Of a DNA stretch of 64,000 nt, positions 1,293 through 37,830 are shown in pieces. Positions within the stretch are counted from its first letter, which is position 1; each line of letters starts with the position of its first letter. The notes below the pieces were generated by a model. That model saw nothing but the letters and a program-made list of their open reading frames with translations. It was not told the origin of the DNA and searched no databases. The position numbers and the translations under genes were made by a program. Source of the DNA: Macrostomum hystrix (lineage: Eukaryota > Animalia > Platyhelminthes); NCBI GenBank assembly GCA_950097015.1, contig CATNEN010000039.1, positions 11,594,001 to 11,658,000 on the forward strand, in the 5' to 3' direction.

Positions 1293-3367
1293 GAATTCCG
1301 GTCGTTTCGGCCATACGCAGTTTCGGCCATAGCCGTTTCGACCAAAAGCCGTTTCGGCCATAGCCGTTTCGGCCAAAAGCCGTTTCGGCCTCAAACCATT
1401 TCGGCCCACATACTTATTAAGCGGCTTTATGGTATTGTTTGTTTGTCAAGGAACTTCTTTTGGCACAACTTTTTCAGTTTTGTTAACTTTCTAAACAACG
1501 ACGCTATGGCACGAATTCAACTTATACAATATTTACAACACAGATGAACATAATAATGCTACATGGACTACTAATAGTAGAAAATGGAACATAAAGAGTT
1601 CTGTCCGTAATTTTCAGTACATTTAAGCAGTCCTTAAAATGAGTTGAAGCCTAAAGGGCTGTACATCTGTAAGTTATATTTCGTCATTCGATGAGAATCA
1701 ACAATTCAATGCCTGTGCATTTAGCTATCCGTCGCGCATAAAATAACTGCTTGGTTTTATCGCGCATAAAATAACTGCTTGGTTTTACAATTATATATAC
1801 AGCAAAATATTTTTCTATGGGGCTGAGAGGTGGCATGACATATATGCATGTAGCTGAAGCTCCAAGCTTGCCCAACCCAAGAAATTTGGAGCGGATGGGC
1901 CGACGAGCGCGGCAAGCGGCTTGGCCGGAAGAACCAGTCAATTTGGACTTTGACATCCAAAAAGCAGCTGTGCCTCTGCATTTGCGCCTAAGCGACGTCC
2001 GTGCAAATGGACACCGACACATTATCGTGTACTCCGAGGCTGGCATCCGGCATCTCGCTGCTGCAAAAACCTGGTTCATGGATGGAACGTTTTACGTTGT
2101 TAAAGAACCATTTTATCAGCTGTTTACCATTCACGCCTTCCTAAAATCTAACGACAATGCCAAGCAACTGCCACTATTGTATGTCCTGATGAGCCGACGC
2201 CGAAAGAGCGACTACAAGCTGGTGCTACGCCGTATTCTACAGCTTATGCCAACTGCCCCTCGACTCCAATCAGTTGTCACTGACTTCGAGAAGGCGATCT
2301 GGAGCGCCTGCAAGTCGGTTCTGCCAGACATGCACATTCGTGGATGTTCTTTCCATTTCCGGCAAGCACTGATGAGGCACCTTCAAGAGGCTGGGTTGCA
2401 GGTGGCCTACCGAACCAATGGCACCGTGAGACATTATTGCCGAAAAGTAATGTCACTTTCCTGTCTGCCGCCTCAGCACGTCTCCCAGGCGTTCGCAGAG
2501 TTACATCGCCAAGCCACTAGTCCGCGCCTCTAGTACGCTGGATGGCGTACATCGAGAGAACGTGGCTTGATGGCGCCCTGTGGCCTCCGAGCTGCTGGTC
2601 CACCTACAGGCAGCTGTTCAGGACGAACAACGATGTCGAAGGCTGGCACAACCGCCTGAACCGAAAAGCTCGCCGTGGCTCACTGCCGTTCTACTGCTTG
2701 TTGCAGCTCATCGGTCAGGAGTGCAAGCATATTCCACTGACGGCGCGGCTGCTGACGGAGGGCAAAGCTATTCGGCTTAAGCGAAAGGCTCACAGAAGCG
2801 CCCAAGAGCAGCTGGAGGCATTATGGAACCATTTCAATCGCACGGCAGCCGATTCCATAGCAGTAAATGCCTTCTTGGACTCTGCAGCCGAACTCATCGG
2901 CAATACTCGTAACGGCAAGTGAAATGCGCTTATCGGTGGTACTGAACTATTCGCATTGGTGCAGAATATTCACGTTTTTAACATTTTTTGTTGTCTGGGG
3001 CCAGTGGCTTACCTAGGGGGGACCGGGGGGTCATATATTATGGGGGATAAACATATCCCCCAATTAGAATATCCATTTACTAAATTCGATAGGTCACTGT
3101 CTGGGCGTTTTTACATTTATACACAAAATACCAAGCCCTCTTCTTTTATTACTTTTATACTCCGCAAAAGTCAAATTCAAATTCGTGCTTTCCATCGTCG
3201 CTATCAAATAAAATTAACAACTCTTAAATAAATTAGAAATTAGCCGTAAGAATACCGCTTTAAATAAGTATTTTGTGAGTTTGGGTCCGAACTGGTTTGA
3301 GGCCGAAACGGTTTGAGGCCGAAACGGCTTTTGGCCGAAACGCCTATGGCCGAAACGACCGGTTACC
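1293..3367 (+). mobile_element. MULE/Mutator-superfamily DNA transposon with tandem-repeat TIRs
   Basis: Left end (g)aattccggtcgtttcggcc followed by ~15-bp gccgtttcggccaNa units (1298-1408). Right end is the inverted equivalent (3286-3367). Flanking direct repeat ccgtaaca(g) at 1285-1292/3 and 3368-3375/6 is an 8-9 bp TSD. Internal transposase present. Confidence 0.9.
1817..2922 (+). pseudogene. MULE DDE transposase, frameshifted near 2530
   Basis: Motifs WFMDGTF, VVTDFE, GCSFH (CxxH) and RTNNDVEGWH are split over ORFs 1817-2533 and 2542-2922 in different frames. No N-terminal DNA-binding domain is evident. Confidence 0.88.
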
Positions 3368-5106: not shown

Positions 5107-6164
5107 CTAAATGCCGGTAGAGGCTTCACCGGCTCGCTGATCTTCAGGTCGGTCCCGCTTTGTAGAACCCGTTGATAATTCATGCCTTCTATATGACGTC
5201 ACTCCATCAATTTGAGACTGGGTGGCCAGGCTAACAAAAATACTGTCGCCGCTTCTCAGACTGAGACTGTTCGCGGTGGAGAATGCCGAGATCTCCATCC
5301 AAGGGCACACGTCTGTGATTAGGAATAGAAAGACAGGGAGACAGGGAGATGTGTAGACAGGGAGATAAGTATATAGAAATTATCACACCTACTCCAGTTG
5401 GGCCATTCAAACTGCTTAAGAAAATCTGAGATTTTGAAACCCAAAAACCCAACACTGCACGCGAGCTCTAACTTCAAGCTTTCCAACTGGTTCCACCTGC
5501 GGGAACATTAAACAGATGCCATGATGTCATGATGGTAAAGCTGTTACATACCGCTAAAGTACGCTAAAAAACCTTAAAGTACGGTTAAACCGAAATAATC
5601 GAAGGACTTACTATCTGCGGTGTGGCCAAAAATATTCGAATAATTAGTCATGCCGAAGAAGCCGTCGATGCAAAACTTTAGTCCCGGCGAATAGATTCCC
5701 AGCCTTTGCCGCACCGATTCCATCACAGCGCCCAGTGGATAGTTATTCAAAATGCGTATCTTCATGCTTATGGTCCAATAATGCAGGCATTTGCGCGAGT
5801 ACATTTTAGATTTCTTAAACAGTCCCTGTGAGAAACACATCCAAAGCAGTGATTCGAAGTTTTTACGTCGAAAGCGAAAATAGATTGTGGCATAGTTTTG
5901 CCTATATGGGCGCAGTGTCTCTCGGTACTGCTTGGCCATAGCCGTTAGGCCATAATTGTAGGCCTCGATTTCCTGAATTAGTTTCGGTTGAGATAACATT
6001 AAAGTTCGCGCACTTCTTCCGTCTTGACTGGAATGCTATAATTGGCATTCGGAATGTCAACTTACCTCCGGAGGTGCTGGTGCTGGTGCATCCTTGTTAG
6101 CAATGGGCATGGAGTTGTTACTGCCATGCTGCAACTCGTCATTCACTTCATTGTTGGACTGCAT
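5107..6164 (-). CDS. SUMO/ubiquitin-like-fold protein, paralog A (exons 6164-6066, 5972-5612, 5312-5107; ~221 aa)
   Basis: GT-AG introns in phase 0 and phase 1 give an open spliced frame. Same exon structure as paralog B. Fold call rests on KIRILNNYPLGAVMESVRQRLGIYSPGLKFCIDG...EISAFSTANSLSLRSGDSIFVSL and is inference. Confidence 0.8.
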
Positions 6165-6517
6165 TTTAAGTCAGCTGGTTCTTGTTCGAGTTTAAAATGT
6201 ATGCAAAAAGCTTTGCGTTACATTTGGATCAATCTTGGTTCTTATCTCGACGCAGCAAATTTTGACTTAACACATTAGTCCTTCCCAACATTCGGGCCAT
6301 AGACGGTGCTCAGAAAGTTATTATACTAGTTGATGCACAGGTACATGAGCTAAGTTGAAAACGCTTGCTAAATATTTGCTAATCAATGCCAGCGTCTATG
6401 GCATAAACTGGTTTTTATAGATCTTCTTCTCTGATTTTTTACTCATTTGTTTCGCAGCTTCTCTGCAATATCTCTCTGAATTATTAGTTTTCTTCTAAAA
6501 CAGCGAAATAAAGCGAA
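6165..6517. promoter_or_regulatory. Putative bidirectional promoter/5' region of the divergent paralog pair
   Basis: Only ~350 bp separate the two divergent ATGs (6164 and 6518). No specific motif identified. Confidence 0.4.
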
Positions 6518-9500
6518 ATGCGCGACAGGTTTAGCAAAGTCACTAAAAATTCCAAGAGCGAACGCTTTCAAGGTATCCAACCTTCCATGGATGCCTCGTA
6601 TGAAGTTCCGGAAATGCCTGAGGTAATGTGTGATGTGTGATTGGAGTGGGGTGTTGTTGCCAGAATGTGTGATGTGTGTTTGGAGTGGGGTGTTGTTGCC
6701 AGAATGTGTGATGTGTGTTTGGAGTGGGCTGTTGTTGCCAGAATGTGTGATGTGTGATTGGAGTGGGGTGTTGTTGCCAGAATGTGTGATGTGTGTTTGG
6801 AGTGGGGTGTTGTTGCCAGAATGTGTGATGTGTGTTTGGAGTGGGGTGTTGTTGCCAGAATGTGTGATGTGTGTTTGGAGTGGGGTGTTGTTGCCAGAAT
6901 GTGTGATGTGTGTTTGGAGTGGGGTGTTGTTGCCAGAATGTGTGATGTGTGTTTGGAGTGGGGTGTTGTTGCCAGAATGTGTGATGTGTGTTTGGAGTGG
7001 GGTGTTGTTGCCAGAATGTGTGATGTGTGTTTGGAGTGGGGTGTTGTTGCCAGAATGTGTGATGTATGATTGGAGTGGGGTGTTGTTGCCAGAATGTGTG
7101 ATGTATGATTGGAGTGGGGTGTTGTTGCCAGAATGTGTGATGTGTGTTTGGAGTGGGGTGTTGTTGCCAGAATGTGTGATGTGTGTTTGGAGTGGGGTGT
7201 TGTTGCCAGAATGTGTGATGTGTGTTTGGAGTGGGGTGTTGTTGCCAGAATGTGTGATGTGTGATTGGAGTGGGGTGTTGTTGCCAGAATGTGTGATGTG
7301 TGATTGGAGTGGGGTGTTGTTGCCAGAATGTGTGATGTGTGTTTGGAGTGGGGTGTTGTTGCCAGAATGTGTGATGTGTGTTTGGAGTGGGGTGTTGTTG
7401 CCAGAATGTGTGATGTGTGTTTGGAGTGGGGTGTTGTTGCCAGAATGTGTGATGTGTGTTTGGAGTGGGGTGTTGTTGCCAGAATGTGTGATGTGTGTTT
7501 GGAGTGGGGTGTTGTTGCCAGAATGTGTGATGTGTGATTGGAGTGGGGTGTTGTTGCCAGAATGTGTGATGTGTGTTTGGAGTGGGGTGTTGTTGCCAGA
7601 ATGTGTGATGTGTGTTTGGAGTGGGGTGTTGTTGCCAGAATGTGTGATGTATGATTGGAGTGGGGTGTTGTTGCCAGAATGTGTGATGTGTGTTTGGAGT
7701 GGGGTGTTGTTGCCAGAATGTGTGATGTGTGTTTGGAGTGGGGTGTTGTTGCCAGAATGTGTGATGTGTGTTTGGAGTGGGGTGTTGTTGCCAGAATGTG
7801 TGATGTGTGTTTGGAGTGGGGTGTTGTTGCCTGCAGAATGTGTGATGTGTGTTTGGAGTGGGGTGTTGTTGCCTGCAGAATGTGTGATGTGTGATTGGAG
7901 TGGGGTGTTGTTGCCAGAATGTGTGATGTGTGTTTGGAGTGGGGTGTTGTTGCCAGAATGTGTGATGTGTGTTTGGAGTGGGGTGTTGTTGCCAGAATGT
8001 GTGATGTGTGTTTGGAGTGGGGTGTTGTTGCCAGAATGTGTGATGTGTGTTTGGAGTGGGGTGTTGTTGCCAGAATGTGTGATGTGTGTTTGGAGTGGGG
8101 TGTTGTTGCCAGAATGTGTGATGTGTGTTTGGAGTGGGGTGTTGTTGCCAGAATGTGTGATGTATGATTGGAGTGGGGTGTTGTTGCCAGAATGTGTGAT
8201 GTATGATTGGAGTGGGGTGTTGTTGCCAGAATGTGTGATGTGTGTTTGGAGTGGGGTGTTGTTGCCAGAATGTGTGATGTGTGTTTGGAGTGGGGTGTTG
8301 TTGCCAGAATGTGTGATGTGTGTTTGGAGTGGGGTGTTGTTGCCAGAATGTGTGATGTGTGATTGGAGTGGGGTGTTGTTGCCAGAATGTGTGATGTGTG
8401 ATTGGAGTGGGGTGTTGTTGCCAGAATGTGTGATGTGTGTTTGGAGTGGGGTGTTGTTGCCAGAATGTGTGATGTGTGTTTGGAGTGGGGTGTTGTTGCC
8501 AGAATGTGTGATGTGTGTTTGGAGTGGGGTGTTGTTGCCAGAATGTGTGATGTGTGTTTGGAGTGGGGTGTTGTTGCCAGAATGTGTGATGTGTGTTTGG
8601 AGTGGGGTGTTGTTGCCAGAATGTGTGATGTGTGATTGGAGTGGGGTGTTGTTGCCAGAATGTGTGATGTGTGTTTGGAGTGGGGTGTTGTTGCCTGCAG
8701 AATGTGTGATGTGTGATTGGAGTGGGGTGTTGTTGCCAGAATGTGTGATGTGTGTTTGGAGTGGGGTGTTGTTGCCAGAATGTGTGATGTGTGTTTGGAG
8801 TGGGGTGTTGTTGCCAGAATGTGTGATGTGTGTTTGGAGTGGGGTGTTGTTGCCAGAATGTGTGATGTATGATTGGAGTGGGGTGTTGTTGCCAGAATGT
8901 GTGATGTGTGTTTGGAGTGGGGTGTTGTTGCCAGAATGTGTGATGTGTGTTTGGAGTGGGGTGTTGTTGCCAGAATGTGTGATGTGTGTTTGGAGTGAGG
9001 TGTTGTTGCCAGAATGTGTGATGTGTGTTTGGAGTGGGGTGTTGTTGCCTGCAGAATGTGTGATGTGTGTTTGGAGTGGGGTGTTGTTGCCTGCAGAATG
9101 TGTGATGTGTGATTGGAGTGGGGTGTTGTTGCCAGAATGTGTGATGTGTGTTTGGAGTGGGGTGTTGTTGCCAGAATGTGTGATGTGTGTTTGGAGTGGG
9201 GTGTTGTTGCCAGAATGTGTGATGTGTGTTTGGAGTGGGGTGTTGTTGCCAGAATGTGTGATGTGTGTTTGGAGTGGGGTGTTGTTGCCAGAATGTGTGA
9301 TGTGTGTTTGGAGTGGGGTGTTGTTGCCAGAATGTGTGATGTGTGTTTGGAGTGGGGTGTTGTTGCCAGAATGTGTGATGTGTGATTGGAGTGGGGTGTT
9401 GTTGCCAGAATGTGTGATGTGTGTTTGGAGTGGGGTGTTGTTGCCAGAATGTGTGATGTGTGTTTGGAGTGGGGTGTTGTTGCCAGAATGTGTGATGTAT

Positions 9501-11176
9501 GATTGGAGTGGGGTGTTGTTGCCAGAATGTGTGATGTGTGTTTGGAGTGGGGTGTTGTTGCCAGAATGTGTGATGTGTGTTTGGAGTGGGGTGTTGTTGC
9601 CAGAATGTGTGATGTGTGTTTGGAGTGGGGTGTTGTTGCCAGAATGTGTGATGTGTGTTTGGAGTGGGGTGTTGTTGCCTGCAGAATGTGTGATGTGTGT
9701 TTGGAGTGGGGTGTTGTTGCCTGCAGAATGTGTGATGTGTGATTGGAGTGGGGTGTTGTTGCCAGAATGTGTGATGTGTGTTTGGAGTGGGGTGTTGTTG
9801 CCAGAATGTGTGATGTGTGTTTGGAGTGGGGTGTTGTTGCCAGAATGTGTGATGTGTGTTTGGAGTGGGGTGTTGTTGCCAGAATGTGTGATGTGTGTTT
9901 GGAGTGGGGTGTTGTTGCCAGAATGTGTGATGTGTGTTTGGAGTGGGTGTTAAAGACGCGAGCCGCACATTATCAGTCAGGTGCAGGTATTCCCACATTT
10001 GAGGATTGATACAGAAGCAAAGCATGTGGATATACTGGGTGCTTCAGAGTAGATAAACAGAAATTGTATGCATTTCTTAGCAAACCTTCGCTAGTATAAT
10101 TACATTTCTATGATTCAATAGCATGCTTTGTACCTATCCGATCTCCGAATATCTAGGAAGTAATCGCCTTCAGTGATCCAGAACTGGCTGAACTGGCTAG
10201 ACTGTTTCGGACAACATTGCGTCCGACCCGAAGCAACTCTATTTATGTGTACTTTCGCATCAGACGCAACAATTATGAAACTCTTCTTCACGAGCTTATT
10301 TCAACGGGAAAAATAACCAAACAGATGATATACTTGCCAGAATACCTGCCGCACTGGACATTGGCAATAAAATTGCGCATTTTAGTCACCATCCCGTTTG
10401 GCCAGGTTCTTGACGCAATCAGGATGCGTCTTGGAATCGAGTCACCAAGATTGAGATTCTGCATCGATGGATTCTTCGGCATGGCCAACTTTAGTGATGT
10501 CTTTGGCAAGACAGGCAGTGAGTACAAAGAGATACTACAATCTAGAACCCATACACAAAACTAACACACAACACAACAATCCAGACCCACAGCTAACACA
10601 CAACACCACAATCCAGACCCACAGCTAACACACAACACCACAATCCAGACCCTCAGCTAACGCACAACACCACAATCCAGACTCACAGCTAACGCACAAC
10701 ACCACAATCCAAACCCACAGCTAACACACAACACAACAATCCAAACCCACAGCTAACGCACAACACCACAATCCAGACCCACAGCTAACACACAACACCA
10801 CAATCCAGACCCACAGCTAACACACAACACAACAATCCAAACCCACAGCTAACACACAACACAACAATCCAAACCCACAGCAACGGCACAACACCACGGC
10901 ACGAAAACCTATCCCATCGATACCCTTTCAAGCGCAGAAACATACACGATCCTCGCCGCTGCTTTAAAAACTCATTCGCACCTGTAACCGGCCCCAACCG
11001 AATTGGCCACAACAGACGTCTGCCCTTGGATGGAGATCTCAAACAACTCATCCACAACGAGTCTTCGCCTAATGAACGGCGACAATATCTTTATGAGCTT
11101 GGCCACAATCCCGGAGATCGTATCGGTTGAGAACTGGCGCAAGCGTCACGCCACGGGTTTAAACGCGAACAATTGA
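6518..11176 (+). CDS. SUMO/ubiquitin-like-fold protein, paralog B (exons 6518-6622, 10157-10517, 11016-11176; ~208 aa)
   Basis: Exon 1 ends ...MPE|gtaatg. Exon 2 is 361 bp, the same length as in paralog A, and ~46% identical by hand alignment. Exon 3 starts (N)VCPWMEIS in both. Alternative start ATG at 6587. Confidence 0.8.
6625..9950. repeat. 39-bp tandem array (~85 units), intronic
   Basis: Unit aatgtgtgatgtgtgtttggagtggggtgttgttgccag with a few variants, including a 42-bp cctgcag form. Confidence 0.98.
10540..10880. repeat. 32-bp minisatellite (~10 units) in intron 2 of paralog B
   Basis: Unit ctaacacacaacaccacaatccagacccacag. Confidence 0.95.
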
Positions 11177-11754: not shown

Positions 11755-12810
11755 AGGAGACATGAGTCAGGTGAGGCATGAGTCAGTGGAGAGATGAGTC
11801 AGGGGAAATGAGTCAGGCGGGGCATGAGTCAGTGGAGAGATGAGTCAGGGGAAAAATGAATCTTAGGAGACATGAGTGAGGGGAGAAATGAGTGAGGGGA
11901 GACATGAGTGAGGGGAGAAATGAGTGAGGGGAGACATGAGTGAGGGGAGAAATGAGTGAGGGGAGACATGAGTGAGGGGAGACATGAGTGAGGGGAGACA
12001 TGAGTGAGGGGAGAAATGAGTGAGGGGAGACATGAGTGAGGGGAGACATGAGTGAGGGGAGAAATGAGTGAGGGGAGAAATGAGTGAGGGGAGAAATGAG
12101 TGAGGGGAGACATGAGTCAGGTGAGACATGAGTCAGGGGAAATGAGTCAGGCGAGGCATGAGTCAGTGGAGAGATGAATCAGGGGAAAAATGAGTCTTAG
12201 GAGACATGAGTGAGGGGAGAAATGAGTGAGGGGAGACATGAGTGAGGGGAGACATGAGTGAGGGGAGAAATGAGTGAGGGGAGACATGAGTGAGGGGGGA
12301 AATGAGTGAGGGGAGACATGAGTGAGGGGAGACATGAGTCAGGTGAGACATGAATCAGTGGATGGATGAGTCAGGTGAGACAGGAGTCAGGGGAGATGAG
12401 TCAGGTGAGAGTCAGGTGAGACAGGAGTCAGGGGAGATGAGTCAGGGGAGATGAGTCAAGTGAGACAGGAGTCAGGGGAGATGAGTCAGGTGAGACAGGA
12501 GTCAGGGGAGATGAGTCAAGTGAGACAGGAGTCAGGGGAGATGAGTCAAGTGAGACAGGAGTCAGGGGAGATGAATCAGGGTAGATGAGTCAGGTGAGAC
12601 AGGAGTCAGGGGAGATGAGTCAGGTGAGACAGGAGTCAGGGGAGATGAGTCAGGTGAGACAGGAGTCAGGGGAGATGAGTCAGGTGAGACAGGAGTCAGG
12701 GGAGATGAGTCAGGTGAGACAGGAGTCAGGGGAGATGAGTCTGGTGAGACATGAATCAGGGGAGAGATGAGTCAGGGGAGAGATGAGTCAGGAGAAAGAT
12801 TAGTCATAGG
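11755..12810. repeat. Purine-rich 16-bp/30-bp compound minisatellite
   Basis: atgagtgaggggagac/a units, then gagtcaggggagatgagtcaggtgagacag units. Confidence 0.93.
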
Positions 12811-14097
12811 AGACAGTGGAGAGATTAAAGAGTAGAGAGTGAGTGTTGAAAGATCCATGTATCTGAATCTTGAATTTTTTATCTGGGCGCAGCACCTTTT
12901 TGACTCATTGCAAAAGTTGAGAAGCTGTGACGGCACTAATGTTGGGTACATTTGTATGAGTCAATTTATTTAAACAGTTCTTGAACGGATGGTTATTGAA
13001 TTTCTCGCAAAACACGCAGTGAGATTCCATTCAATTTAATTCAAAATGTGTCCCACTACGTGTGTACTATATTTATAACCATATTGTGTTTTCGTCGTCC
13101 GTGCATAGTTTATGGTTAAATTATACTAAACGTTATAACAAAATACAAATACAGCAACGATAAAAGAAGATCACACCAACACGTTGTTAGTATGCTAAAC
13201 CATAGCAACAATAACTAATTACATTTATTTCAAACACTTTTCTAACAGTAATCTTTTTACAGCGAGAAATGTAATGGCAACATGAATGACATAGTATTCG
13301 TTACTATAAGCAATTTGAGATTTTAACGTCGTTAAAACGAGAATCGATTATGGTGACCCGTGGGATTATCTGTGTTTTGTAATACTCTCTATATCTATGT
13401 TGCAGGTGTCATGAACCATATTTTCGACAATACAACAACAGCAAAGAGAAAATAAGTGGCTAATTTTGATGTGGAAGACAAACGACCGTTTTTCCCCAGT
13501 AAATTGTTTCTAATATTCGATCTAAGCATTTGTTCAAAGTGAAGTTTCGGCATCGATTGTGTCTCTTTCATAGGGAAATATATATTACAATAAATAAATT
13601 CACCAACGATATAGTCGCTCCCAATGCTTCTTTTATCCCATGCTGCCTAGGCCATCTCATGGAGCGATCATTAAGGACAATCAGAAAGGCCATAAGAGTG
13701 ACCATTCTAAGTGACCATTCTAAGGCCGCTATAGACCACATTTAGTGGAAAAGCACCCAGTGTGACTGGAGTCGTCATTTTGTCTATGGCCATAACCAAC
13801 TGTAAATAGAGGGACACGAATGTACTTTTCACACTGGCCTACTCTCGAGTCTGCTTCTTAGATATGTCTATGGTCCAAGCACTCGGGCCAGAGCAAACCT
13901 TTGGGTCTGAAATCCTTTACTTTGACTAGCCCCTAAAACAAAACAGTGCGGCGAAAACGCAATTGTCTATGGTTTAAACATACAACTCTCCGCACCCCAA
14001 ATCTCCTTTGTAGTTTGATGGGAAAAAAGTGATAAATGTGATTAAACGATGTTGCAACACATGGCTTTATGGTGATCCGTACAACATGAAGACAATG

Positions 14098-17000
14098 TCA
14101 TAAAGTGGTCACCTTCTGCTTCTCCGTGAATCCTTCTTCGCCTTCCTCAATAACCAGTGGCGCGGACACCGCGGTGACATCCTCGGCCATCTTGGCCAAG
14201 CTGCTGACGATGCTGAAGTGCCGACTTTGCTTCTCTTTGCGTTTATCAATGAAGCTTCCTAGCCAGCCTTTTAGGCGGTGCGACACCAGGTAGACAACGA
14301 TTGGGGCCGGGGTGAAAATGGCCGCAGCTAGCGGCATGATGGTGGCCAGGTCGGCTGTGGGACTGTCGCAGGACATGCGAATCGCTGGAATAGCCACCAG
14401 GCAGGCGCAGCAGGCGGTCTCGGCTGCGAGGGTTTTCCGACGCGGCTTGTCTAGCTTGACGATAAAGCTAGCCAGTCCGCCGAGACAGAATCCGGCCGCG
14501 ATAAAGGTCAGAACGCAGCCCATGGCTTTGGGCTCGAGATGGTCGATGGCGTAGTGGTTGATGTAGATTCCCAGCGTCACCATGAGGATGCTAGCCAGTA
14601 GCAGCAGCGGCCTGCCGACCCAATTCAGCGCTGCCTGGGCCAGACTTGGCCGGCAGGTGGCAACTAAGCAGCCGGTGAGCTGGCTAATGAATAAGATCAG
14701 TAGCCAAAGAACCAGGCGATAGTGAAGCAACTGCAGCTGAAGGTAGTGCGAGAACAGACTCAACCATGCCGGGGACAAACCTGTGTGACAGAGGTTTACT
14801 GCTTAAAAAATAATGATAATAATGGCAGGAGGGGTTCGGAAAATGGCACATCATTTGGTGACACTGTAATAACTAAGGCCGAGGCTCAGACAAAACTCTC
14901 ACCTTTACTGCCGCGCTGAGCGCGCGTCTATATATTATTTTCTAGAACTGGGGTGGCGACACCCACCCCGCTCCGCAACCAATCAAACGACCCAGGTGTA
15001 CACCTGGGCCTGGCTCACGTGCATACGCACACTAGACCCGCAGTCAGCGAGGAGGCAATTCTGCCCATTTCGCTGACTCCAAAGCACACACGCACACACT
15101 CACACAGGTGTGTACATCTGCCCTGACTTTCTCATCGTACACTTCATCGCCTTAGAGGTTGGCCCAAGGACTACTACAACAACACTAAACAAAAATAAGT
15201 GTTGTTTAGTAGTCCTTGGGTTGGCCCTCAGGGGCGTAAATTGCACGACAAGCCCCCAAGCCTTCTCTCCGCGGCTGCGCCCCAAATAAATGTGGCCTCG
15301 CCGTGGAATCGAACTTATGGACCTTGTAGCGAGAGGCAAACGCGTTTGACCGCTCTGCCACCGACCCCCCTGGGTGTACCGCTTTCATTTAGTTCGCTTA
15401 TATTGTTGAAAACTATTGCAGTAGATGTCTAGTCGACATATCTAAATACCTAACAGAATGAAAGTACAGTTGCTTTGATTATGTACATTCCTCAACTGTA
15501 CCAAGCAAAACAGTGAGCAAACTTACTTAACAGCACCTGCTGATTATCAATAGCAACTGTAGTGCGCCGCGTATATGCCGTTGTTTACCATTATCTCGTA
15601 TCACTGAACGTACACCTGGCTATGTACACCTGGCTATGAACACCTGGCTATGTACACCTGGCTATGTACACCTGGTTAGGTACACCTGGCTATGTACACC
15701 TGGCTATGTACACCTGGCTATGTACACCAGGCTGCCAGGTCCAAGTCAGCGGGCTGAGGTGGGTGTCTCGCCCGGCCCAGAATATATAGATTTACAATTT
15801 ATATATCTGCACCCATCACTACAATACTGCACCCATCACTACAATACTGCACCCATCACTACAATACTGCACCCATCACTACAATACTGCACCCCTCACT
15901 ACAATACTGCACCCATCACTTCAATACTGCACCCCTCACTACAATACTGCACCCATCACTTCAATACTGCACCCATCACTACAATACTACACCCATCACT
16001 ACAATACTGCACCCATCACTACAATACTGCACCCATCACTACAATACTGCACCCATCACTACAATACTGCACCCCTCACTACAATACTGCACCCCTCACT
16101 ACAATACTGCACCCATCACTACAATACTGCAACCATCACTACAATACTGCACCCATCACTACAATACTGCACCCATCACTACAATACTGCACCCATCACT
16201 ACAATACTGCACCCATCACTACAATACTGCACCCATCACTACAATACTGCACCCATCACTACAATACTGCACCCCTCACTACAATACTGCACCCATCACT
16301 TCAATACTGCACCCCTCACTACAATACTGCACCCATCACTTCAATACTGCACCCATCACTACAATACTACACCCATCACTACAATACTGCACCCATCACT
16401 ACAATACTGCACCCATCACTACAATACTGCACCCATCACTACAATACTGCACCCCTCACTACAATACTGCACCCCTCACTACAATACTGCACCCATCACT
16501 ACAATACTGCAACCATCACTACAATACTGCACCCATCACTACAATACTGCACCCATCACTACAATACTGCACCCATCACTACAATACTGCACCCATCACT
16601 ACAATACTGCACCCATCACTACAATACTGCACCCATCACTACAATACTGCACCCATCACTACAATACTGCACCCATCACTACAATACTGCACCCAGCCCT
16701 ACAATATTGTACGAGTAGATCGAGAATCGAGAATGCATCTGGTCTGAGCCCGCTGTCAAAACTACATAAATTAATTAATAAAAAATGAGTAAATAAATGA
16801 ATGATAACTACGCCTGTACATAGGAAATCAGAGACTTAGGAAATCAGAGACTTAGGAAATTAGAGATTTAGGAAATTAGAGACTTAGGAAATCAGAGACT
16901 TAGGAAATTAGAGACTTAGGAAATCAGAGACTTAGGAAATCAGAGACTTAGGAAATCAGAGACTTAGGAAATTAGAGACTTAGGAAATCAGAGACTTAGG

Positions 17001-20000
17001 AAATCAGAGACTTAGGAAATCAGAGACTTAGGAAATCAATGATTACTTACTTAATGATTACTTAATAATTGGCTTCAGGCTGCTAAAATATTGGACCTGG
17101 TACTGCCAGAGATTGGCACTTTTTAATCGGTGAGATTTACAAGTATATTATTTACTGCGAATAGAAAAAAGATGTCATCCACACTCACATTGGGTGAGAG
17201 AGCGATAGCCCACTTATAGAGTTCCTACGTTTTGCGTAGATTCAGCAGAGATAAAAGCAGGACTGTTTGGACTGAAAGAAGTGTTCTAAGACAGCTTTTA
17301 ATTCGGCGCGATTATTACCTTTATTGCTATTATTGTCAATTGGTGATTCCAATTGTAGTTTTTTAGAAGACTTGCTCAGTGGCAGTGAGCATTCTATTGT
17401 GACTGTTGACGGCTGTCAACACCGCTCGCCAGCGGCTTCAGATAGGCCCCCTAATATGGAATTTATCGCTGCCAATTGCCAAGCAGCAGCAGCAGCAGCA
17501 GCAGCAGCATCACCTCAAGCAACATCAGCTGCTGGTCGAACACTTTTCAGCACCTTCAGCATGCACCAAGTGCGTAATTGCATGTACAACGAGTCCCAAG
17601 AGGCTATCATTTCACAGATGAGGCAACTCATTGGAGATGCCAACGCCATCTCATCCAGCCAGCTGAATGATGAGTGAGTACCTCAATTAGTTTATCGGAT
17701 GTCTGTATTTTAGATCCATACAAGTCTTTCCCACAAATTAGGGCCTATACAAATACTTTAATTCGCAATAGAGTTTCATCAAATTTCTGATGCCGTCTCT
17801 TCCAGGCCAGCAAGATCTTCTAAAAACAAAATAGGAAACTAATGGAATTATAACAATATTATCAATGTGTGCAGGAGGGCTGCGGGCAAGGCCAATAATT
17901 TTGTGACACTAGACCCGCAGCTAGTGAGGAGGCAATTCTGCCCATTTCGCTGACTCCTGAGCACACACGCACACAGATGCTGTACACAGGCACGCACTCA
18001 CAGGTGTGTACATCTGCCCTGAATTTATTATCGCCAGGCAGTGTACACTTCCCTGTGCCTTCGAGGTCGGCCCTTAAGGGGCACAGCAAGCCCCCAAGCC
18101 TTCTCTCCGCGGCTGCGCCCCAATTTAATGTGGCCTCGCCGCGGAATCGAACTCAGGGACCTTTAAGTGACAGGCTAATCCCTAAATTAAGGATTTCTCA
18201 GCACTTGAAATGGACTACACTATGGACTATTTAAATCAGAAGTTATTTAATGTTGGGTTAAATGAATAGTGAACTAAATTAAATTTTGTTTTCGGAACAT
18301 TTCTAGACATCAGTTCACTTCTTTGCTGAGATTTGCAGTCGCATGTAGTGAGCTATTTTTATAGCGTAGGCTAATTCGCTACCAGAAGAAAATGTAGAGG
18401 CTAGTTGTACAGATTGAAGAGAATTATAGAAGAGTTTAGTCGGGCATTTTAGCTGCCTCAGCAAACGGGTGAGGGATGCTACGAGTCAGTTGATCCTAAT
18501 TTATACTGCGGTTAAATTAATTACAATATTTTCTGTACATAGGGAGGGAGAGTGGGGGAGCTTTCCCGCAGGAGCTTTTCCCACAGCAAGGTTTTCCCGC
18601 AGGAGCTTTTCCCACAACAACGTTTTCCCGCAGGAGCTTTTCCCACAACTGGGTTTTCCCGCAGGAGCTTTTCCCACAACAACGTTTTCCCGCAAGAGCT
18701 TTTCCCGCAACTAGGTTTTCCCGCGGGAGCTTTTCCCACAACAACGTTTTCCCGCAGGAGCTTTTCCCACAACAACGTTTTCCCGCAGGAGCTTTTCCCA
18801 CAACTAAGTTTTCTCGTGCGAGCATTTCCCACAACAACGTTTTCCCGCAGGAGCTTTTCCCACAACTAAGTTTTCTCGTGCGAGCATTTCCCACAACAAC
18901 GTTTTCCCGCAGGAGCTTTTCACACAACAAGGTTTTCCTTCAGGAGCTTTTCCCACAACTAGGTTTTCCCGCAGGAGCTTTTCACACAACAAGGTTTTCC
19001 TTCAGGAGCTTTTCCCACAACCAGGTTTTCCCGCAGGAGCTTTTCCCACAACTAGGTTTTCCCGCAGGAGCTTTTCCCACAACAAGGTTTTCGCGCAGGA
19101 GCTTTTCCCACAACTAGGTTTTCCCGCAGGAGCTTTTCCCACAACTAGGTTTTCCCGCAAGAGCTTTTCCCACAACAAGGTTTTCGCGCAGGAGCTTTTC
19201 CCACAACTAGGTTTTCCCGCAGGAGCTTTTAGTGCAGTAGCTTTTCCCGACGAGCTTTTCCTGATTTTCCACGGCGGGAGAGAATCCGCGGGAAAAACAT
19301 CTGCGTGAAACTGTCTGTGGAAACAAGTCTCATATACTCGTTTTTACGAACAGATATGAGCTCCCAAAGGTGCAATCAGGGTTAGGCGCGTTATCAAAAA
19401 AGTAACGGTGATGGCGGTACCGATCGAAACTGACCATCTGGTAACGGAAAATTGGGTAACGAAAGATTACCTAAAACATAATATCGGTCGCTACTTTCGT
19501 ATTTTTTCTTACAGTGCTACCTAAAATCTGCTATTTTACTTAACCATGTTATAATTTTGTGAAGCTTTGTTTATCTGTCATTCCACAAATCAATTGTTGT
19601 AATCGCAACATCGAATTGGAAACAGAAAAGGCTGCCGGACTTCCGATCACATGGCAACCCTATTGACATTAATTCATAAAACGAAGAAAAAGAAAAAACC
19701 TTTCCATTTAGTTTTCTTTGATTTAAAAAGCGCCTTTGACATGGTTCACCACCCAACCCTTGTGACACGATTAAAGCAGTTGGGCGTGAACCCAGCAATA
19801 ATAAGTACCATTGAGAGTATGTACTCAAGCGCGAAATTTCACCTCAAGGTGTCAGAAAGCACAGCTGCTGAGGCGTGTCAAATTACTAATGGCGTCAGGC
19901 AAGGATGCCACCTATCTCCACTGCTAGTCTCCCTATACATCGACCCGCTAAGCACAATCCTAAAAAACTCATTTCAAAGCCATACCTCCATATTGAATGA

Positions 20001-23000
20001 AGAAGTAAACAACCTGCTTTATTGTGACGGTTTGGTCATTTTTGGTGAAGACCTGACAGAATTACAAAAAGGCCTCCACAAAGTAGCAGATTTTAGCAAT
20101 ATTCAGAAATTAGAAATAAACACTGAGAAGACAAAGCTTCTGAGCTGCAATCTCCACTCAAGGGCAGCACATAGAATGTTTTTACATTGTCGAACGGTTG
20201 AACCCGTACAGCAGTGGACATATCTTGGGTTTCGCATGAAGGTGAAACCAACAATAAATAATCAAAAAGCCCGAATCGGCGTGTGCATTTCAATAATTAA
20301 AAGAATAATAATGTGCCAGAAGACGTAGACATAATCCGTGTCCACGAAGTTAACGAAATAGAAGCGTGCGTTATTTTATTGTGATGACCATGAAATGACA
20401 AATCGAAACGAAAAGTTGAATGCTTTTTTGCTTTCAATGTTTTATAACCAATGTAGTTAGTTGCTGCGCAAGCAATATATAAACGTGTCTATATTAGAGC
20501 ACAAGCGATATTTAATGGAGTGCATGAGGTCAAGCAAGGCCACGCGCACACTATGCACATCATTAGTGTTTAAATTTCAGAGCTTATAACTACATTAATA
20601 TAGCCCACAGATACTATAATAACGAAAGGAAGAAATAATTTGTCTGTTGTAACCACAGAACCACAAGTAAGTTCTGTGGCTGTAACTTTCTTTGTTGCTT
20701 GCTCTGTTGTTACTCTTTTCAATAAACCAAAAAACCAAAAAATAAAAAAATTCTACTGAATTGAAAGTAGCTTGCAAGTATATGTGTTGAGTGACCTATC
20801 TAGTTATTATAGTATCTGTGATATAGCCTAAACCATCCTCATTCCCACCTTGCAAGCTCATTGATCAGTTCAGTTTCATCTGAAATGAAAAATTCGATTG
20901 TCTTTATCCTCCTAGGTAGAAAGGAGAGAGCTGGTGCTGGTGGGAACATTTTGTTACTTATATTATGCAAACAGAGAATATCGAAGAAGCTAGTTTACTT
21001 AGGGATATACCTTTCTGCATGTTGAACACATGTTGAAGACGCCATTCTTCGTCTCGGCTATGCTCCCCATGTGACCTAAAGTGCTCGCAGTTTTTACCGA
21101 ATTGATTCTGTCTTCTATGGTACATCCCGACACCGCTGCCACGTCATACTGCTGACAGCCACGCACCAATTTGAACGCAGAAAGAACCAAAAAGGATTGA
21201 AAAAGCTATATTATCGAGCAAGAAAAAGAAAGAACAAGAAAGAACTAGTGCAGACAAATGAACTAGCAGCAACACAACTTGGTCCAAGCTTCGACATAAA
21301 GCAAATTGTGCCTTTTATTAGATTTGCTGTGAACAGTGTTACTCTCTGGATCATCAAATCATACCGCAGGTGCCGATTCATTCCAATTGGAGGTCATAGT
21401 GAATCCGCTATAATTTCTGGGTTGATTTCAGCAGCAAAATTTTTACTGATTTTTAAATTCTCAAACTGGCCAAGGCCATGCTTCTGCTGATCCTGGCACT
21501 GCAAGTTTCCATGGCAACTGCAGCCTGTGAGTTGCCGATTCGCAAGTACAATGTCTATAAATCCTGGCAGTCGTCCTTTGAGATTTTCCGCCAAAGAATG
21601 ACTTGCTTCGAAACCAGAAGCTTTCTCTTAGAGGAATATATTTTAAAGAATTATCTCCCCAGCTACGACTTCTTCCACAGCAAAGACAGAAGCTATGCAG
21701 ACGGAGGATTTCATTGGTTCGCAGTGAAGCTGTCTGGGTCAGTGATCATCAGATCAGTCACTGTGAAGGGCATAGCGGGTGAGTCACTGCTCCATTTTTC
21801 CATGCACATCAGCCTCCACTGCTTAGTCGTGAAGTTCTCACTTTTAGATGGCGCTACATATCTCTACCCGAGAGCCAGAGACATCGAGATCTGGACATCG
21901 AGCAGCAGCAGTCAGCTGTTCTCAGGTGAACACTGCATCTCAAGAAACATGAGCAGCCAGTTCAGAGAGTCTCAGCATCTCTGGAGACGGTGCGGCCTGA
22001 CGGTGAGCAAGCGGGCGCGTATCGAGGATGGTGAGATCTTCACCGTGAACTGCTTAGCGGAGGTGAGACCTGCTCTGTGCCTTGAGTTGTGCTCTTTTGA
22101 GTTCTGGATCCCACTGAGATTTCATCTGAACTCCAGGTGAGATACTTGCTGCTGCGAAGGAACATTACTGTATCACCGAATAATGAGGACTACATGAGCT
22201 TCGCAGATCTCAGACTTCAGACTGTGCAGCTGAGTGAGTTCGGGTCTTTTACTATGGACCTATTGTTGTGGAAGGGAAATTCTATAATTTCCTTGATTTA
22301 GCAATGTCAATTGGATGATTTGTAAATCTCCAGAATCCTCAGCGCCTCAGCTGGTGCCTCAGAGCTCAAAGTTCAGTGTGAGCTGCTTGCTGCACTGCGA
22401 TGGAGAAAAACTCAACTCGAGCTCAAGCGAGCTGCAGCTGTGCACTCCCAACGGCAGCTGCATAAATGGCCATGAGCTGCACATTGGCAGTGCTCAGCCT
22501 GAGCACTCAGGTGACTACAGGTGCAGATTCGGATCGATTGCAGGAACATCCACTGTCAGTGTGCTGAGTGAGTTCAATTTAAAAGTAGTTTCTCAAGCAG
22601 GAAACGCTCAAGCGGGACATTTTTACACTTCAAATCGTAGCTCGGACAAATTAGACAAACGGTCAAAAATAGCACAATGCAGAAGTTAGCCTGGGGAAAT
22701 TATTTAAAGTAGAAAGGCTGAACTAGCCAATTTAAACACGACACGACACGATAAACAATTTAGGAACTGACTGAAGAATCCAAGGTAAGCAGACAGCAAA
22801 ACAGACAGGGCAGGGTAGCAAACACCCAAAGTCAATTGAAACGCCAATAGCCAATTCAACGACCATGCTGATTAATGGAATTCATGAACTCGTTGAGAAA
22901 TCAGCTCCTCATCAACGAAAATCGATACTAGATTCCTATCCTGCCTTTACCTCGTCACAGAGACTTCAGTCACATAAAATGCATTCGATCGCTATTTGTT

Positions 23001-35516: not shown

Positions 35517-36164
35517 TTTGCTGCAGTTTATTGATATTCAGCAGCAGCAGAGACCAAATTCTCGCAAAGCATTCGCTAGGTCTGTTCTATTAAAAGAAGA
35601 AGATAAAAAGAAGTTAAATAATTATTCTTTCATTCCCGTCTAGTTTAGCTGGCTTGACTGGAAGAATCTGCACCGATTTGCCTATTGTTGAGGCTGGTTT
35701 TGGACTGAGTGAGAGAATAGAAGAAAGCAGAGAGAGAAAGAAATAGAAGACTAGCACGCCTTTGCCAGTCACCGGATTGGCCGTCGACCAACCCCTCCTC
35801 CCCCGCCAGACGCTGCGTGTGTGCTTGCTCCGCTCGCAAAAAAGCCTTTTCGCCTCGCCATTTGGACGCGCCCTAAAACCCTAAAACTGCTTCTCTAGCC
35901 TTCCTAGATTTCTACCTCCCTCAAAATGTCTTCCCAAAGCTTATCCAGTTGTGCAGCCACCTACTGTGCAGTTCAGTGTAGCAGATGGGCATTAAATGCA
36001 ATCTCTGTTCATATTTTTTATTGCAATTCAATGGATTCTGCTTTAGATTTTCTTTATAGTACAAAAGGGGCTCTATAGAAAGACAGCAAGGCCAAAGTGT
36101 ACTGCTGTTCAAGGCTTTCATTGTGTGTGTGTGTGTGTGTGTGTGTGCATACGTCTCATATTTT

Positions 36165-37830
36165 TAGATTCTGTGTGAATATCTGTAGATTCTGTGTGAA
36201 CATCTGTAGATTCTGTGTGAATATCTGAAGATTCTGTGTGAATATCTGTAGATTCTGTATGAATATCTGTAGATTCTGTGTGAACATCTGTAGATTCTGT
36301 GTGAATATCTGTAGATTCTGTGTGAATATCTGTAGATTCTGTGTGAATATCTGTAGATTCTGTGTGAATATCTGTAGATTCTGTTGAATATCTGTAGATT
36401 CTGTGTGAATATCTGTAGATTCTGTGTGAATATCTGTAGATTCTGTGTGAATATCTGTAGATTCTGTGTGAATATCTGTACATTCTGTGTGAATATCTGT
36501 AGATTCTGTGTGAATATCTGTAGATTCTGTGTGAATATCTGTAGATTCTGTTTGAATATCTGAAGATTCTGTGTGAATATCTGTAGATTCTGTGTCAATA
36601 TCTGTAGATTCTGTGTGAATATCTGTAGATTCTGTGTGAATATCTGTAGATTCTGTGTGAATATCTGTACATTCTGTGTGAATATCTGTAGATTCTGTGT
36701 GAATATCTGTAGATTCTGTGTGAATATCTGTAGATTCTGTTTGAATATCTGAAGATTCTGTGTGAATACATGTAGATTCTGTGTGAATATCTGTAGATTC
36801 TGTGTGAATATCTGTAGATTCTGTGTGAATATCTGTAGATTCTGTGTGAATATCTGTAGATTCTGTGTGAATATCTGTAGATTCTGTGTGAATATCTGTA
36901 GATTCTGTGTGAATATCTGTAGATTCTGTGTGAATATCTGTAGATTCTGTGTGAATATCTGTAGATTCTGTGTGAATATCTGTAGATTCTGTGTGAATAT
37001 CTGTAGATTCTATGTGAATATCTGTAGATTCTGTGTGAATATCTGTAGATTATGTGTGAATATCTGTAGATTCTATACATGTGAATATCTGTAGATTCTG
37101 TTGAATATCTGTAGATTCTGTGTGAATATCTGTAGATTCTGTGTGAATATCTGTAGATTCTGTGTGAATATCTGTAGATTCTGTGTGAATATCTGTAGAT
37201 TCTGTGTGAGTATCTGTAGATTCTGTGTGAGTATTGTGAGTATCTGAAGATTCTGTGTGAATATCTGAAGATTCTGTGTGAATATCTGTAGATTCTGTGT
37301 GAATATCTGAAGATTCTGTGTGAGTAACTGAAGATTCTGTGTGATTATCTGAAGATTCTGTGTGAGTAACTGAAGATTCTGTGTGAATATCTGAAGATTC
37401 TGTGTGAGTAACTGAAGATTCTGTGTGAATATCTGTAGATTCTGTGTGAGTATCTGAAGATTCTGTGTGAATATCTGAAGATTCTGTGTGAGTATCTGTA
37501 GATTCTGTGTGAGTATCTGAAGATTCTGTGTGAGTATCTGTAGATTCTGTGTGAGTATCTGAAGATTCTGTGTGAGTAACTGAAGATTCTGTGTGAGTAA
37601 CTGAAGATTCTGTGTGAGTAACTGAAGATTCTGTGTGAGTAACTGAAGATTCTGTGTGAGTAACTGAAGATTCTGTGTGAGTATCTGCAGATTCTGTGTG
37701 AATATCTGAAGATTCTGTGTGAGTATCTGAAGATTCTGTGTGAGTATCTGAAGATTCTGTGTGAGTAACTGAAGATTCTGTGTGAGTAACTGAAGATTCT
37801 GTGTGAGTATCTGAAGATTCTGTGTGAAAG
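36165..37830. repeat. 21-bp minisatellite (~79 units), preceded by (tg)n
   Basis: Unit tctgtgtgaatatctgtagat; variant units accumulate toward the right. Confidence 0.97.

What the first reader, a model, noticed from the sequence alone, without database searches (positions are those of the whole stretch)
5107..11176. Head-to-head pair of atypical SUMO/ubiquitin-like genes hidden by splicing
Seen: two divergent 3-exon genes with ATGs ~350 bp apart, identical intron phases (0,1) and identical 361-bp middle exons (~46% aa identity by hand), both with open frames. Known: SUMO/Rad60-SLD domains follow FKIK..TPL.KLM.AYC.RQG.....IRF.FDG..I....TP..L.M..GD.I.V. Here the order is IKLRILVTIPFGQVLDAIRMRLGIESPRLRFCIDG [insert] EISNNSSTTSLRLMNGDNIFMSL. 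Inference: a beta-grasp fold with a ~30-aa insertion after the first strand and a ~21-aa insertion after FCIDG. There is no C-terminal GG, only a shared TG (HATG / LSTG). This could be a lineage-specific, non-conjugated (or unusually processed) Ubl family, co-transcribed and possibly heterodimeric.
Basis: partly seen in the sequence, partly recalled or inferred. Interest (0 to 1): 0.82.

Follow-up and report, generated by a model that had tools for sequence, protein, structure and literature searches.

The report
Flatworm-only SUMO-like gene pair
Two back-to-back genes in the flatworm Macrostomum hystrix encode members of a gene family, so far seen only in this genus, whose proteins fold like the protein tag SUMO but carry two extra inserted segments and lack the end needed for attachment to other proteins, so they probably act as SUMO look-alikes that bind partners rather than as tags.

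Summary
Two intact three-exon paralogues lie head to head, with their ATGs 353 bp apart. Both have intron phases 0 and 1 and a 361-nt middle exon. They are 49% (exon 2) and 52% (exon 3) identical in protein.

The genome is Macrostomum hystrix. It holds at least 12 loci of this family. A profile search of 1.84 billion representative proteins found 20 relatives. All those looked up are M. lignano proteins, apart from one unnamed read-assembly contig.

Pfam calls no domain in any member. Three other lines point to SUMO:
- A family profile run against PDB sequences lists only SUMO in its top 30.
- hhalign against the worm's own SUMO gives 87% probability (E 4e-6).
- AlphaFold2 models of an unspliced paralogue and of the closest M. 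lignano homologue superpose on SUMO (Z 10.6-10.7, 73-77 residues, rmsd 1.2-1.4 Å).

No member has a Gly-Gly after β5.

Most likely these are non-conjugatable SUMO-like binding modules. Their partners, co-transcription and heterodimerisation were not tested. Verdict: a new variant of a known kind, of moderate interest.

The parts
6066..6164 (-). Gene A exon 1 (33 codons, ATG at 6164)
   Evidence: Open frame and GT donor. MQSNN...NNSMPIANK...PPE aligns with the N-terminus of M. lignano P0009 (MVSNN...NNSMPLADK...LPE) up to the junction.
5973..6065 (-). Gene A intron 1 (93 nt, phase 0)
   Evidence: GTAAGT...TTCAG. P0009 is continuous across this junction.
5612..5972 (-). Gene A exon 2 (361 nt): pre-domain helix, beta1 (5868-5894), insertion 1 (5775-5867), beta2, alpha1, beta3, the DGFFG hallmark and the start of insertion 2
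   Evidence: 58% identical to P0009 residues 47-166 without gaps. Secondary structure transferred from the P0009 model.
5313..5611 (-). Gene A intron 2 (299 nt, phase 1)
   Evidence: GTAAGT...CACAG. Unspliced paralogues L005 and L006, and P0009, are continuous here.
5107..5312 (-). Gene A exon 3: end of insertion 2, beta4 bridge (MEIS), beta5 (SIFVSL, ends at 5227), C-terminal helix/tail, stop TAG 5109-5107
   Evidence: 52% identical to B exon 3; aligned to the family; no GG. The first full codon is GTG; the tool shows it as M, but internally it reads V.
6165..6517 (.). 353-bp intergenic spacer between the two ATGs: presumed bidirectional promoter plus both 5' UTRs
   Evidence: Coordinates. 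The promoter function is inferred, not tested. The bacterial-type scan is not informative for a flatworm.
6518..6622 (+). Gene B exon 1 (35 codons, ATG at 6518)
   Evidence: Open frame and GT donor. ...KNS...YEVPEMPE aligns with P0015 ...NNS...YVCPEMPE and with the other short-type N-termini.
6623..10156 (+). Gene B intron 1 (3534 nt, phase 0); it holds a 39-bp satellite at 6625-9951 (85 copies, 97% matches)
10157..10517 (+). Gene B exon 2 (361 nt): beta1 (10238-10264), insertion 1 (10265-10357), beta2 (10358-10384), alpha1 (10397-10432), beta3 (10451-10462), DGFFG and the start of insertion 2 (10472-10517)
   Evidence: 49% identical to A and 48% to P0010. Structure transferred through alignment A2 and the P0009 model.
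10518..11015 (+). Gene B intron 2 (498 nt, phase 1); it holds a 32-bp array at 10561-10897 (10.5 copies)
   Evidence: P0010 has the same length as B across this junction (TTG-D-SCPW against KTG-N-VCPW).
11016..11176 (+). Gene B exon 3: end of insertion 2, beta4 bridge (MEIS), beta5 (NIFMSL, 11084-11101), tail, stop TGA 11174-11176

Best explanation
Genes A and B are intact, divergently oriented paralogues in Macrostomum hystrix. They belong to a family so far found only in Macrostomum, with at least 12 loci in this genome.

Each protein has a short, poorly ordered N-terminus with a conserved N-x-S motif, a helix, and one SUMO-like beta-grasp domain. Two family-wide insertions interrupt that domain. 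The first is a helical segment of about 30 residues in the beta1-beta2 hairpin. The second is a loop of about 21 residues that begins with the hallmark DGF(Y/F)G, right after the acidic residue of SUMO's 'FDG'. A helix follows beta5. There is no Gly-Gly, so the proteins cannot be processed and conjugated as SUMO is.

The family most likely descends from SUMO. I infer that it works as a non-covalent SUMO mimic or adaptor, as the SUMO-like domains of Rad60/Esc2/NIP45 do. It would use the retained beta2/alpha1 groove (basic-hydrophobic beta2, the R-x-G at the end of alpha1) and/or the 'DG' acidic residue to bind SIM-bearing partners or the E2 Ubc9, with the insertions giving lineage-specific specificity.

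Shown: gene structure, paralogy, family distribution, SUMO-like fold with two insertions, absence of GG. Inferred: SUMO ancestry (about 0.7), non-covalent partner binding within the SUMO pathway (about 0.35), shared bidirectional promoter (about 0.5).
For: Gene models and paralogy.

Splice junctions:
- Unspliced paralogues L005 and L006 run straight through the exon 2/3 junction.
- M. lignano P0009 and the 1016-bp Logan contig protein P0010 are continuous across both junctions.

Family size and distribution:
- 14-16 six-frame matches at about 12 loci in the own genome.
- 20 hits at E<=1e-3 in 1.84e9 representatives. All of those looked up are M. lignano, plus one Logan contig.

SUMO relationship by sequence:
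- The top 30 PDB hits of the family profile are all SUMO/Smt3, and all match the beta2-alpha1-beta3 stretch.
- hhalign against the own-genome SUMO gives probability 86.9%, E 4.2e-6, 57 columns, 33% identity, with a 20-residue gap after DG.

Fold:
- AF2 model of the L005 domain has pLDDT 85.8. The P0009 model has pLDDT above 90 across the domain core.
- Foldseek top hits are SUMO1/2/3 and Nip45 SLD2, with target TM 0.8-0.89.
- VIA-align gives Z 10.6 to AtSUMO2 (77 of 77 residues, rmsd 1.4 Å) and Z 10.6-10.7 to diSUMO-2 (73 of 73 residues, rmsd 1.2 Å, 22-27% identity). Ubiquitins score Z of about 8 at 4-13% identity.

No GG after beta5 in 16 of 17 sequences. The one exception lies 24 residues downstream, in an acidic tail.

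Coding constraint: pN 0.33 against pS 0.77.
Against: - Pfam Rad60-SLD and ubiquitin models do not hit any member, spliced or not. A six-frame PF11976 scan of the genome finds SUMO and ubiquitin genes but none of the family loci.
- The fold was modelled on relatives, not on A or B themselves, from shallow alignments of 21-25 rows.
- Insertion 2 sits exactly where SUMO and Rad60 SLD2 touch the back of Ubc9. Insertion 1 could cover the SIM groove. Either could abolish the inferred interactions.
- There are no expression, interaction or localisation data.
- The A/B clade diverges fast: 52-57% identity to its nearest M. lignano relative, against about 90% for the long-type members. This fits a derived function as well as it fits a conserved SUMO-pathway role.
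Confidence: 0.7

Rival explanations
1. The SUMO-like fold is only a scaffold. The family has left the SUMO pathway and serves a lineage-specific role, for example a fast-evolving reproduction-related or regulatory function, through the new surfaces: the two insertions, the N-x-S motif and the C-terminal helix.
For: The most conserved family-specific residues lie in or next to the insertions (WT before beta2, DGF(Y/F)G, the P in insertion 2) and in the upstream N-x-S motif. The A/B clade evolves much faster than the long-type members. The family is absent outside Macrostomum.
Against: The stretch most similar to SUMO is the SIM-groove region, beta2-alpha1, at 33% identity with conserved basic/hydrophobic alternation and R-x-G. 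The acidic residue of 'DG' is kept in nearly all members.
Confidence: 0.25
2. A and B are unusually processed, conjugatable modifiers that use a non-GG C-terminus, for example cleavage at the 'TG' the reader noted.
For: Both proteins contain a TG in the tail. The domain is SUMO-like.
Against: The TG dipeptides are not aligned between A and B and are absent from the relatives. The tails vary from 26 to more than 50 residues. A confident helix follows beta5 where SUMO has its flexible ..TGG tail. No GG is present.
Confidence: 0.03
3. The models are not real expressed genes: they are decaying duplicates or chance open frames stitched together by hand.
For: No transcript data for M. hystrix could be consulted. 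Intron 1 of B is swollen by a 3.3-kb satellite.
Against: All frames are open and all eight splice sites are canonical. pN is well below pS. Family-wide hallmark residues are intact in both genes. Annotated M. lignano proteins and a contig-encoded 218-aa protein have the same architecture without interruption.
Confidence: 0.04

Closest known systems
SUMO (Smt3, SUMO1-3), including M. hystrix's own SUMO genes on contig C34
   Same: Same beta-grasp fold over the whole SUMO core: 73-77 residues at rmsd 1.2-1.4 Å, Z 10.6-10.7, with 18-27% identity in the structural alignment. The beta2-alpha1-beta3 stretch is recognisable by profile, including the R-x-G-L at the end of alpha1 and the acidic residue of F-x-F-D-G.
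   Different: No C-terminal Gly-Gly. A helical insertion of about 30 aa between beta1 and beta2, and an insertion of about 21 aa after DG. A helix after beta5. An N-terminal extension with an N-x-S motif. Below Pfam thresholds. Multi-copy and restricted to one genus.
SUMO-like domains of the RENi family (Rad60, Esc2, NIP45/NFATC2IP)
   Same: Non-conjugatable SUMO-like domains without GG embedded in larger proteins. Nip45 SLD2 (3a4r) and the NFATC2IP Ubl (2jxx) are among the best structural matches. The acidic residue that Rad60 SLD2 uses on Ubc9 (own knowledge; PDB 3rcz) has an aligned Asp in the family's 'DG'.
   Different: One SLD instead of two in tandem. Large insertions. Structural and sequence similarity is higher to SUMO itself (Z 10.6, 22-27% identity) than to Rad60 SLD2 (Z 7.8-8.3, 15% identity). 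No detectable sequence homology outside the SLD.
M. lignano hypothetical proteins BOX15_Mlig022324 (PAA86659.1; UniRef A0A1I8GFI7 'Rad60-SLD domain-containing protein'), Mlig015520, Mlig027574, Mlig014754, Mlig010594, Mlig029560
   Same: True family members. P0009 is 58% identical to A over exon 2, with the same N-terminus, the same insertions and the same tail helix.
   Different: A different species. They are uncharacterised, carry only automatic names, and no paper was found. The Pfam scan here does not reproduce the Rad60-SLD call.

Membership tests
SUMO (conjugatable modifier) | SUMO-type beta-grasp fold | tested here: met
   AF2 models of paralogue L005 and homologue P0009 superpose on SUMO at Z 10.6-10.7, 73-77 residues, rmsd 1.2-1.4 Å. 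Foldseek top hits are all SUMO. Tested on relatives, not on joined A or B exons.
SUMO (conjugatable modifier) | C-terminal Gly-Gly a few residues after beta5, exposed by a SENP/Ulp protease | tested here: not met
   No GG after beta5 in A, B or 14 of the 15 relatives. The single GG lies 24 residues downstream in an acidic tail. The models show a helix after beta5.
SUMO (conjugatable modifier) | Activation by the SUMO E1 and transfer to Ubc9 | not testable with these tools
   Needs biochemistry.
Pfam PF11976 Rad60-SLD (ubiquitin clan) | Score above the curated gathering threshold (23.8 bits) | tested here: not met
   No hit at E<=10 for the exon translations, the unspliced paralogues or 10 M. 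lignano/Logan members. The six-frame PF11976 scan of the genome lists 47 matches, none at a family locus. A UniRef record nevertheless names P0009 'Rad60-SLD domain-containing'.
RENi family (Rad60/Esc2/NIP45) | Two tandem C-terminal SUMO-like domains | tested here: not met
   There is one SLD per protein. The residues before it are low-confidence or helical in the P0009 model, and only one matched stretch per protein appears in the profile search.
RENi family (Rad60/Esc2/NIP45) | SLD without GG that binds Ubc9 or SUMO-pathway partners non-covalently | tested here: inconclusive
   Absence of GG is met. The aligned Asp of 'DG' and the groove residues are retained. Binding itself was not testable, and insertion 2 lies at the expected E2 contact.
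RENi family (Rad60/Esc2/NIP45) | N-terminal SUMO-interacting motifs | not tested
   No systematic SIM scan was done. The N-termini of A and B are 33-35 residues long and polar.

The most novel reading that the evidence does not exclude
Macrostomum has evolved its own multi-gene family of SUMO-derived, non-conjugatable 'pseudo-SUMOs'. Their two insertions re-wire the SIM groove and the E2 contact. For example, insertion 1 might act as a built-in SIM-like lid. The head-to-head pair A/B would be co-regulated and act as a heterodimeric modulator of sumoylation in germline or stem cells.
Probability: 0.12. Interest if true: 0.7.

Novelty: new variant of a known kind. Interest (0 to 1): 0.45.

Why it matters
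SUMO-like domains that cannot be conjugated are known mainly from one conserved family, Rad60/Esc2/NIP45, where they steer the SUMO E2 and genome maintenance. This is a second, independent, genus-restricted and expanded set of SUMO-derived domains, with two conserved insertions at functionally sensitive places: the hairpin next to the SIM groove and the loop that contacts Ubc9.

If these proteins still touch the SUMO machinery, they would be natural, evolvable modulators of sumoylation. M. lignano is a regeneration and stem-cell model in which transgenesis has been established (abstract of PMC5730564). If they do not touch it, they show how a modifier fold is recycled for new functions.

Practically, the finding gives M. 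hystrix and M. lignano annotators a domain call that Pfam misses.

Tried and rejected
- Pfam on each exon, on unspliced paralogues and on database homologues gave nothing relevant.
- A word search with B exon 2 was blank because of the length window and divergence.
- A PF11976 six-frame scan of the own genome finds SUMO and ubiquitins, not the family.
- I first guessed Drosophila from the sequence style. This was rejected. The assembly size of 220,453,370 bp in 42 contigs equals the M. hystrix assembly, and the relatives are M. lignano proteins.
- dN/dS between A and B cannot be computed because synonymous sites are saturated. Only pN below pS is reported.
- The supplements of the M. lignano genome paper held as text do not list the gene ids. 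The literature search for the family found nothing.
- The protein-atlas search and the look-up of encoding contigs were closed, so the M. lignano locus arrangement could not be examined.
- The sigma-70 promoter scan is irrelevant for a flatworm.
- The complementarity between the two intronic arrays is largely compositional.
Full report
**What is in the sequence**

The region 5107-11176 holds two genes on opposite strands, oriented head to head.

| | Gene B (+) | Gene A (-) |
|---|---|---|
| Exon 1 | 6518-6622 | 6164-6066 |
| Exon 2 | 10157-10517 | 5972-5612 |
| Exon 3 | 11016-11176 | 5312-5107 |

- All eight splice sites are GT..AG.
- Intron phases are 0 and 1 in both genes.
- Both middle exons are 361 nt.
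- The two ATGs are 353 bp apart.
- Intron 1 of B is 3534 nt long because it holds a 39-bp satellite (6625-9951, 85 copies). Intron 2 of B holds a 32-bp array (10561-10897).

Exon 2 of A and exon 2 of B are 49% identical in protein (E 2e-41). The first 42 residues of exon 3 are 52% identical (E 3e-15). Synonymous sites are saturated (pS 0.77) and non-synonymous sites are not (pN 0.33). This is an old duplication, and both copies remain under coding constraint.

**Whose genome**

The window lies on contig C39 of an assembly of 220,453,370 bp in 42 contigs. These are exactly the figures that Wiberg et al. 2023 give for Macrostomum hystrix (PMC10468722). All named relatives of the proteins are from M. 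lignano. This is a free-living flatworm and not human sequence.

**How I handled the spliced models**

Nature supplies the joined versions.

- Paralogues in the same genome (L005, a 257-aa open frame; L006, 245 aa) run without an intron through the place where A and B have intron 2.
- The annotated M. lignano protein P0009 (PAA86659.1, 244 aa) and a 218-aa protein P0010, encoded on a 1016-bp Logan contig, are continuous across both junctions.
- P0009 is 58% identical to A over the whole of exon 2 without a gap. It shares A's N-terminus (MVSNN...NNSMPLADK...LPE|EINAY against MQSNN...NNSMPIANK...PPE|EIEAY).
- P0010 has the same length as B across the exon 2/3 junction.

These comparisons support the start codon of A and all four junctions. 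RNA-seq would still be the direct proof.

**The family**

Six-frame searches of the M. hystrix genome with B exon 2 and with L006 find about 12 loci. A tree separates two groups:

- A short type: A, B, L003, L004 and the broken L007.
- A long type: L005, L006, L008, L009, the tandem pair L010/L011, L012 and L014.

A profile of the family, scored against 1.84 billion representative proteins, found 20 proteins at E<=0.001. Every one I looked up is M. lignano, plus one Logan contig. The two word searches added nothing from outside the genus.

The long-type members are about 90% identical to their M. lignano counterparts. A and B are only 57% and 52% identical to their nearest relative, P0009. The A/B clade therefore evolves fast.

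**What the domain is**

Pfam does not recognise it. There is no hit for the exons, the unspliced paralogues or ten database members. A six-frame scan with PF11976 (Rad60-SLD) finds the worm's SUMO and ubiquitin genes but none of the family loci.

Three more sensitive tests agree with one another:

1. The family profile run against all PDB sequences returns 30 hits, and all 30 are SUMO/Smt3. Each matches the same 36 residues, 'lrfkilrqaplkvaLnaflsRlGlesnpkivfCrDG', against SUMO2 '[35 protein letters not shown]'. The E-values are marginal: 0.0018 for a tandem SUMO and 0.2-1.3 otherwise.
2. hhalign of the family alignment against M. hystrix's own SUMO gives probability 86.9% and E 4.2e-6. It aligns 57 columns at 33% identity, from beta2 to beta5, with a 20-residue gap right after 'DG'.
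3. AlphaFold2 models superpose on SUMO.
   - The L005 domain model has pLDDT 85.8 and pTM 0.74. The P0009 model has pLDDT above 90 in the domain core.
   - Both have the order beta1, helix, beta2, alpha1, beta3, long loop with a one-residue bridge, beta5, helix.
   - Foldseek ranks SUMO1/2/3 and Nip45 SLD2 first, with target TM 0.8-0.89.
   - The Foldseek-independent aligner gives Z 10.6 to AtSUMO2 (77 of 77 residues, rmsd 1.4 Å) and Z 10.6-10.7 to diSUMO-2 (73 of 73, rmsd 1.2 Å, 22-27% identity).
   - Ubiquitins sit at about Z 8 with 4-13% identity.

About 50 residues of the 123-residue span do not align with SUMO.

- About 30 residues between beta1 (YVYFRIR in B) and beta2 (WTLAIKLRI).
- About 21 residues from DGFFG to PWMEIS.

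The intron 2 position falls inside the second insertion.

**Conjugation**

No member has Gly-Gly within reach of beta5. The only GG lies 24 residues downstream, in one acidic tail. The models place a helix where SUMO has its flexible TGG tail. The 'shared TG' is neither aligned nor conserved. The proteins are therefore not SUMO-type modifiers in the canonical sense.

**How it most likely works**

Shown:
- A SUMO-derived fold.
- Retention of the basic/hydrophobic alternation of beta2 and of the R-x-G-L at the end of alpha1. In SUMO these form the groove for SUMO-interacting motifs (own knowledge).
- Retention of the Asp in 'DG'. This corresponds to the acidic residue that SUMO and Rad60 SLD2 use on the back of Ubc9 (own knowledge; PDB 3rcz is among the structural hits).

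Inferred: the proteins act as non-covalent SUMO mimics or adaptors, like the SUMO-like domains of Rad60/Esc2/NIP45, with the insertions changing partner specificity. I give this mechanism about 0.35.

The main rival, at about 0.25, is that the fold is only a scaffold and the conserved new features carry a lineage-specific function. Those features are WT before beta2, DGF(Y/F)G, the Pro in insertion 2, an upstream N-x-S motif present in 14 of 18 members, and the tail helix. The fast evolution of the A/B clade fits this rival.

Insertion 2 sits exactly at the expected E2 contact, and insertion 1 lies next to the groove. Either could block the ancestral interactions. I could not inspect model coordinates to decide.

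Co-transcription from the 353-bp spacer and A:B heterodimerisation remain untested conjectures.

**Comparison with what is known**

The domain works like, and probably descends from, SUMO. It is not a member of the conjugatable SUMOs, because it lacks GG. It is not a RENi protein, because it has one SLD rather than two and no homology outside the SLD. It does not reach Pfam's Rad60-SLD threshold. One M. lignano homologue carries the automatic UniRef name 'Rad60-SLD domain-containing protein'. No paper on the family was found. I file it as a new variant of a known kind: a genus-restricted, expanded family of SUMO-like domains with two conserved insertions.

**Limits**

- The fold was modelled on relatives, from shallow alignments of 21-25 rows.
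- No transcript data were available.
- 'Only in Macrostomum' reflects the public protein sets searched, which hold few other macrostomorphans.

Noticed in passing
window 6625-9951 and 10561-10897: Exon 2 of gene B is bracketed by two arrays. Intron 1 holds a GT-rich 39-bp satellite (85 copies). Intron 2 holds a CA-rich 32-bp array whose unit resembles the reverse complement of the 39-mer (local score 37 against 10 for the same strand). The predicted RNA duplex is strong (-86.7 kcal/mol), but shuffles give -75.6 on average, so the pairing is mostly compositional. It could promote pre-mRNA looping, exon skipping or back-splicing.
   Followed up: partly
window 6090-6098 (gene A, NNS) and 6548-6556 (gene B, KNS); family alignment A2: A conserved N-x-S motif (mostly NNS) lies 35-45 residues upstream of beta1 in 14 of 18 family members, in both subfamilies. 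In long-type members it follows a (F)EW(L/C)D motif. No signal peptide is evident, so a glycosylation sequon seems unlikely. Its function is unknown.
   Followed up: no
L010 and L011 (G000:C7:2.887 and 2.920 Mb): A tandem pair of long-type paralogues about 33 kb apart. An apparent intron inside alpha1 stays open in frame, giving 430-439-aa uninterrupted reading frames.
   Followed up: no
L007 (G000:C41:239158-239334): A short-type family fragment with an in-frame TGA, probably a pseudogene.
   Followed up: no
window 1817-2533 (+): Open frame with a MULE transposase domain (PF10551, E 1.3e-13), 2.6 kb beyond the 3' end of gene A.
   Followed up: partly
window 19651-20328 (+): Reverse-transcriptase fragment (PF00078, E 3.7e-26), a retroelement remnant.
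   Followed up: partly
window 54145-54654 (-): Intronless 169-aa ferritin gene (PF00210, E 5.6e-38).
   Followed up: partly
window 48207-51308 (+): A 1033-aa single open frame with RanBP2-type zinc fingers and FG(A/I)-rich repeats, i.e. a Nup153-like nucleoporin.
   Followed up: partly
window 11756-12815, 15636-16718, 24195-25202, 26424-27062, 36164-37080, 52879-53366, 56570-57337, 62850-63472: The window is unusually rich in minisatellite arrays that stay open in several frames and mimic long ORFs. The arrays at 15636-16718 and 26424-27062 encode the same repeat.
   Followed up: no
G000:C34:1315739-1315945 (-) and 1324783-1324989 (+): Two identical-scoring canonical SUMO genes (ending ..QSQVGGCN) lie about 9 kb apart in inverted orientation. 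A 295-aa frame on C41:40659-41084 holds two adjacent Rad60-SLD matches.
   Followed up: no
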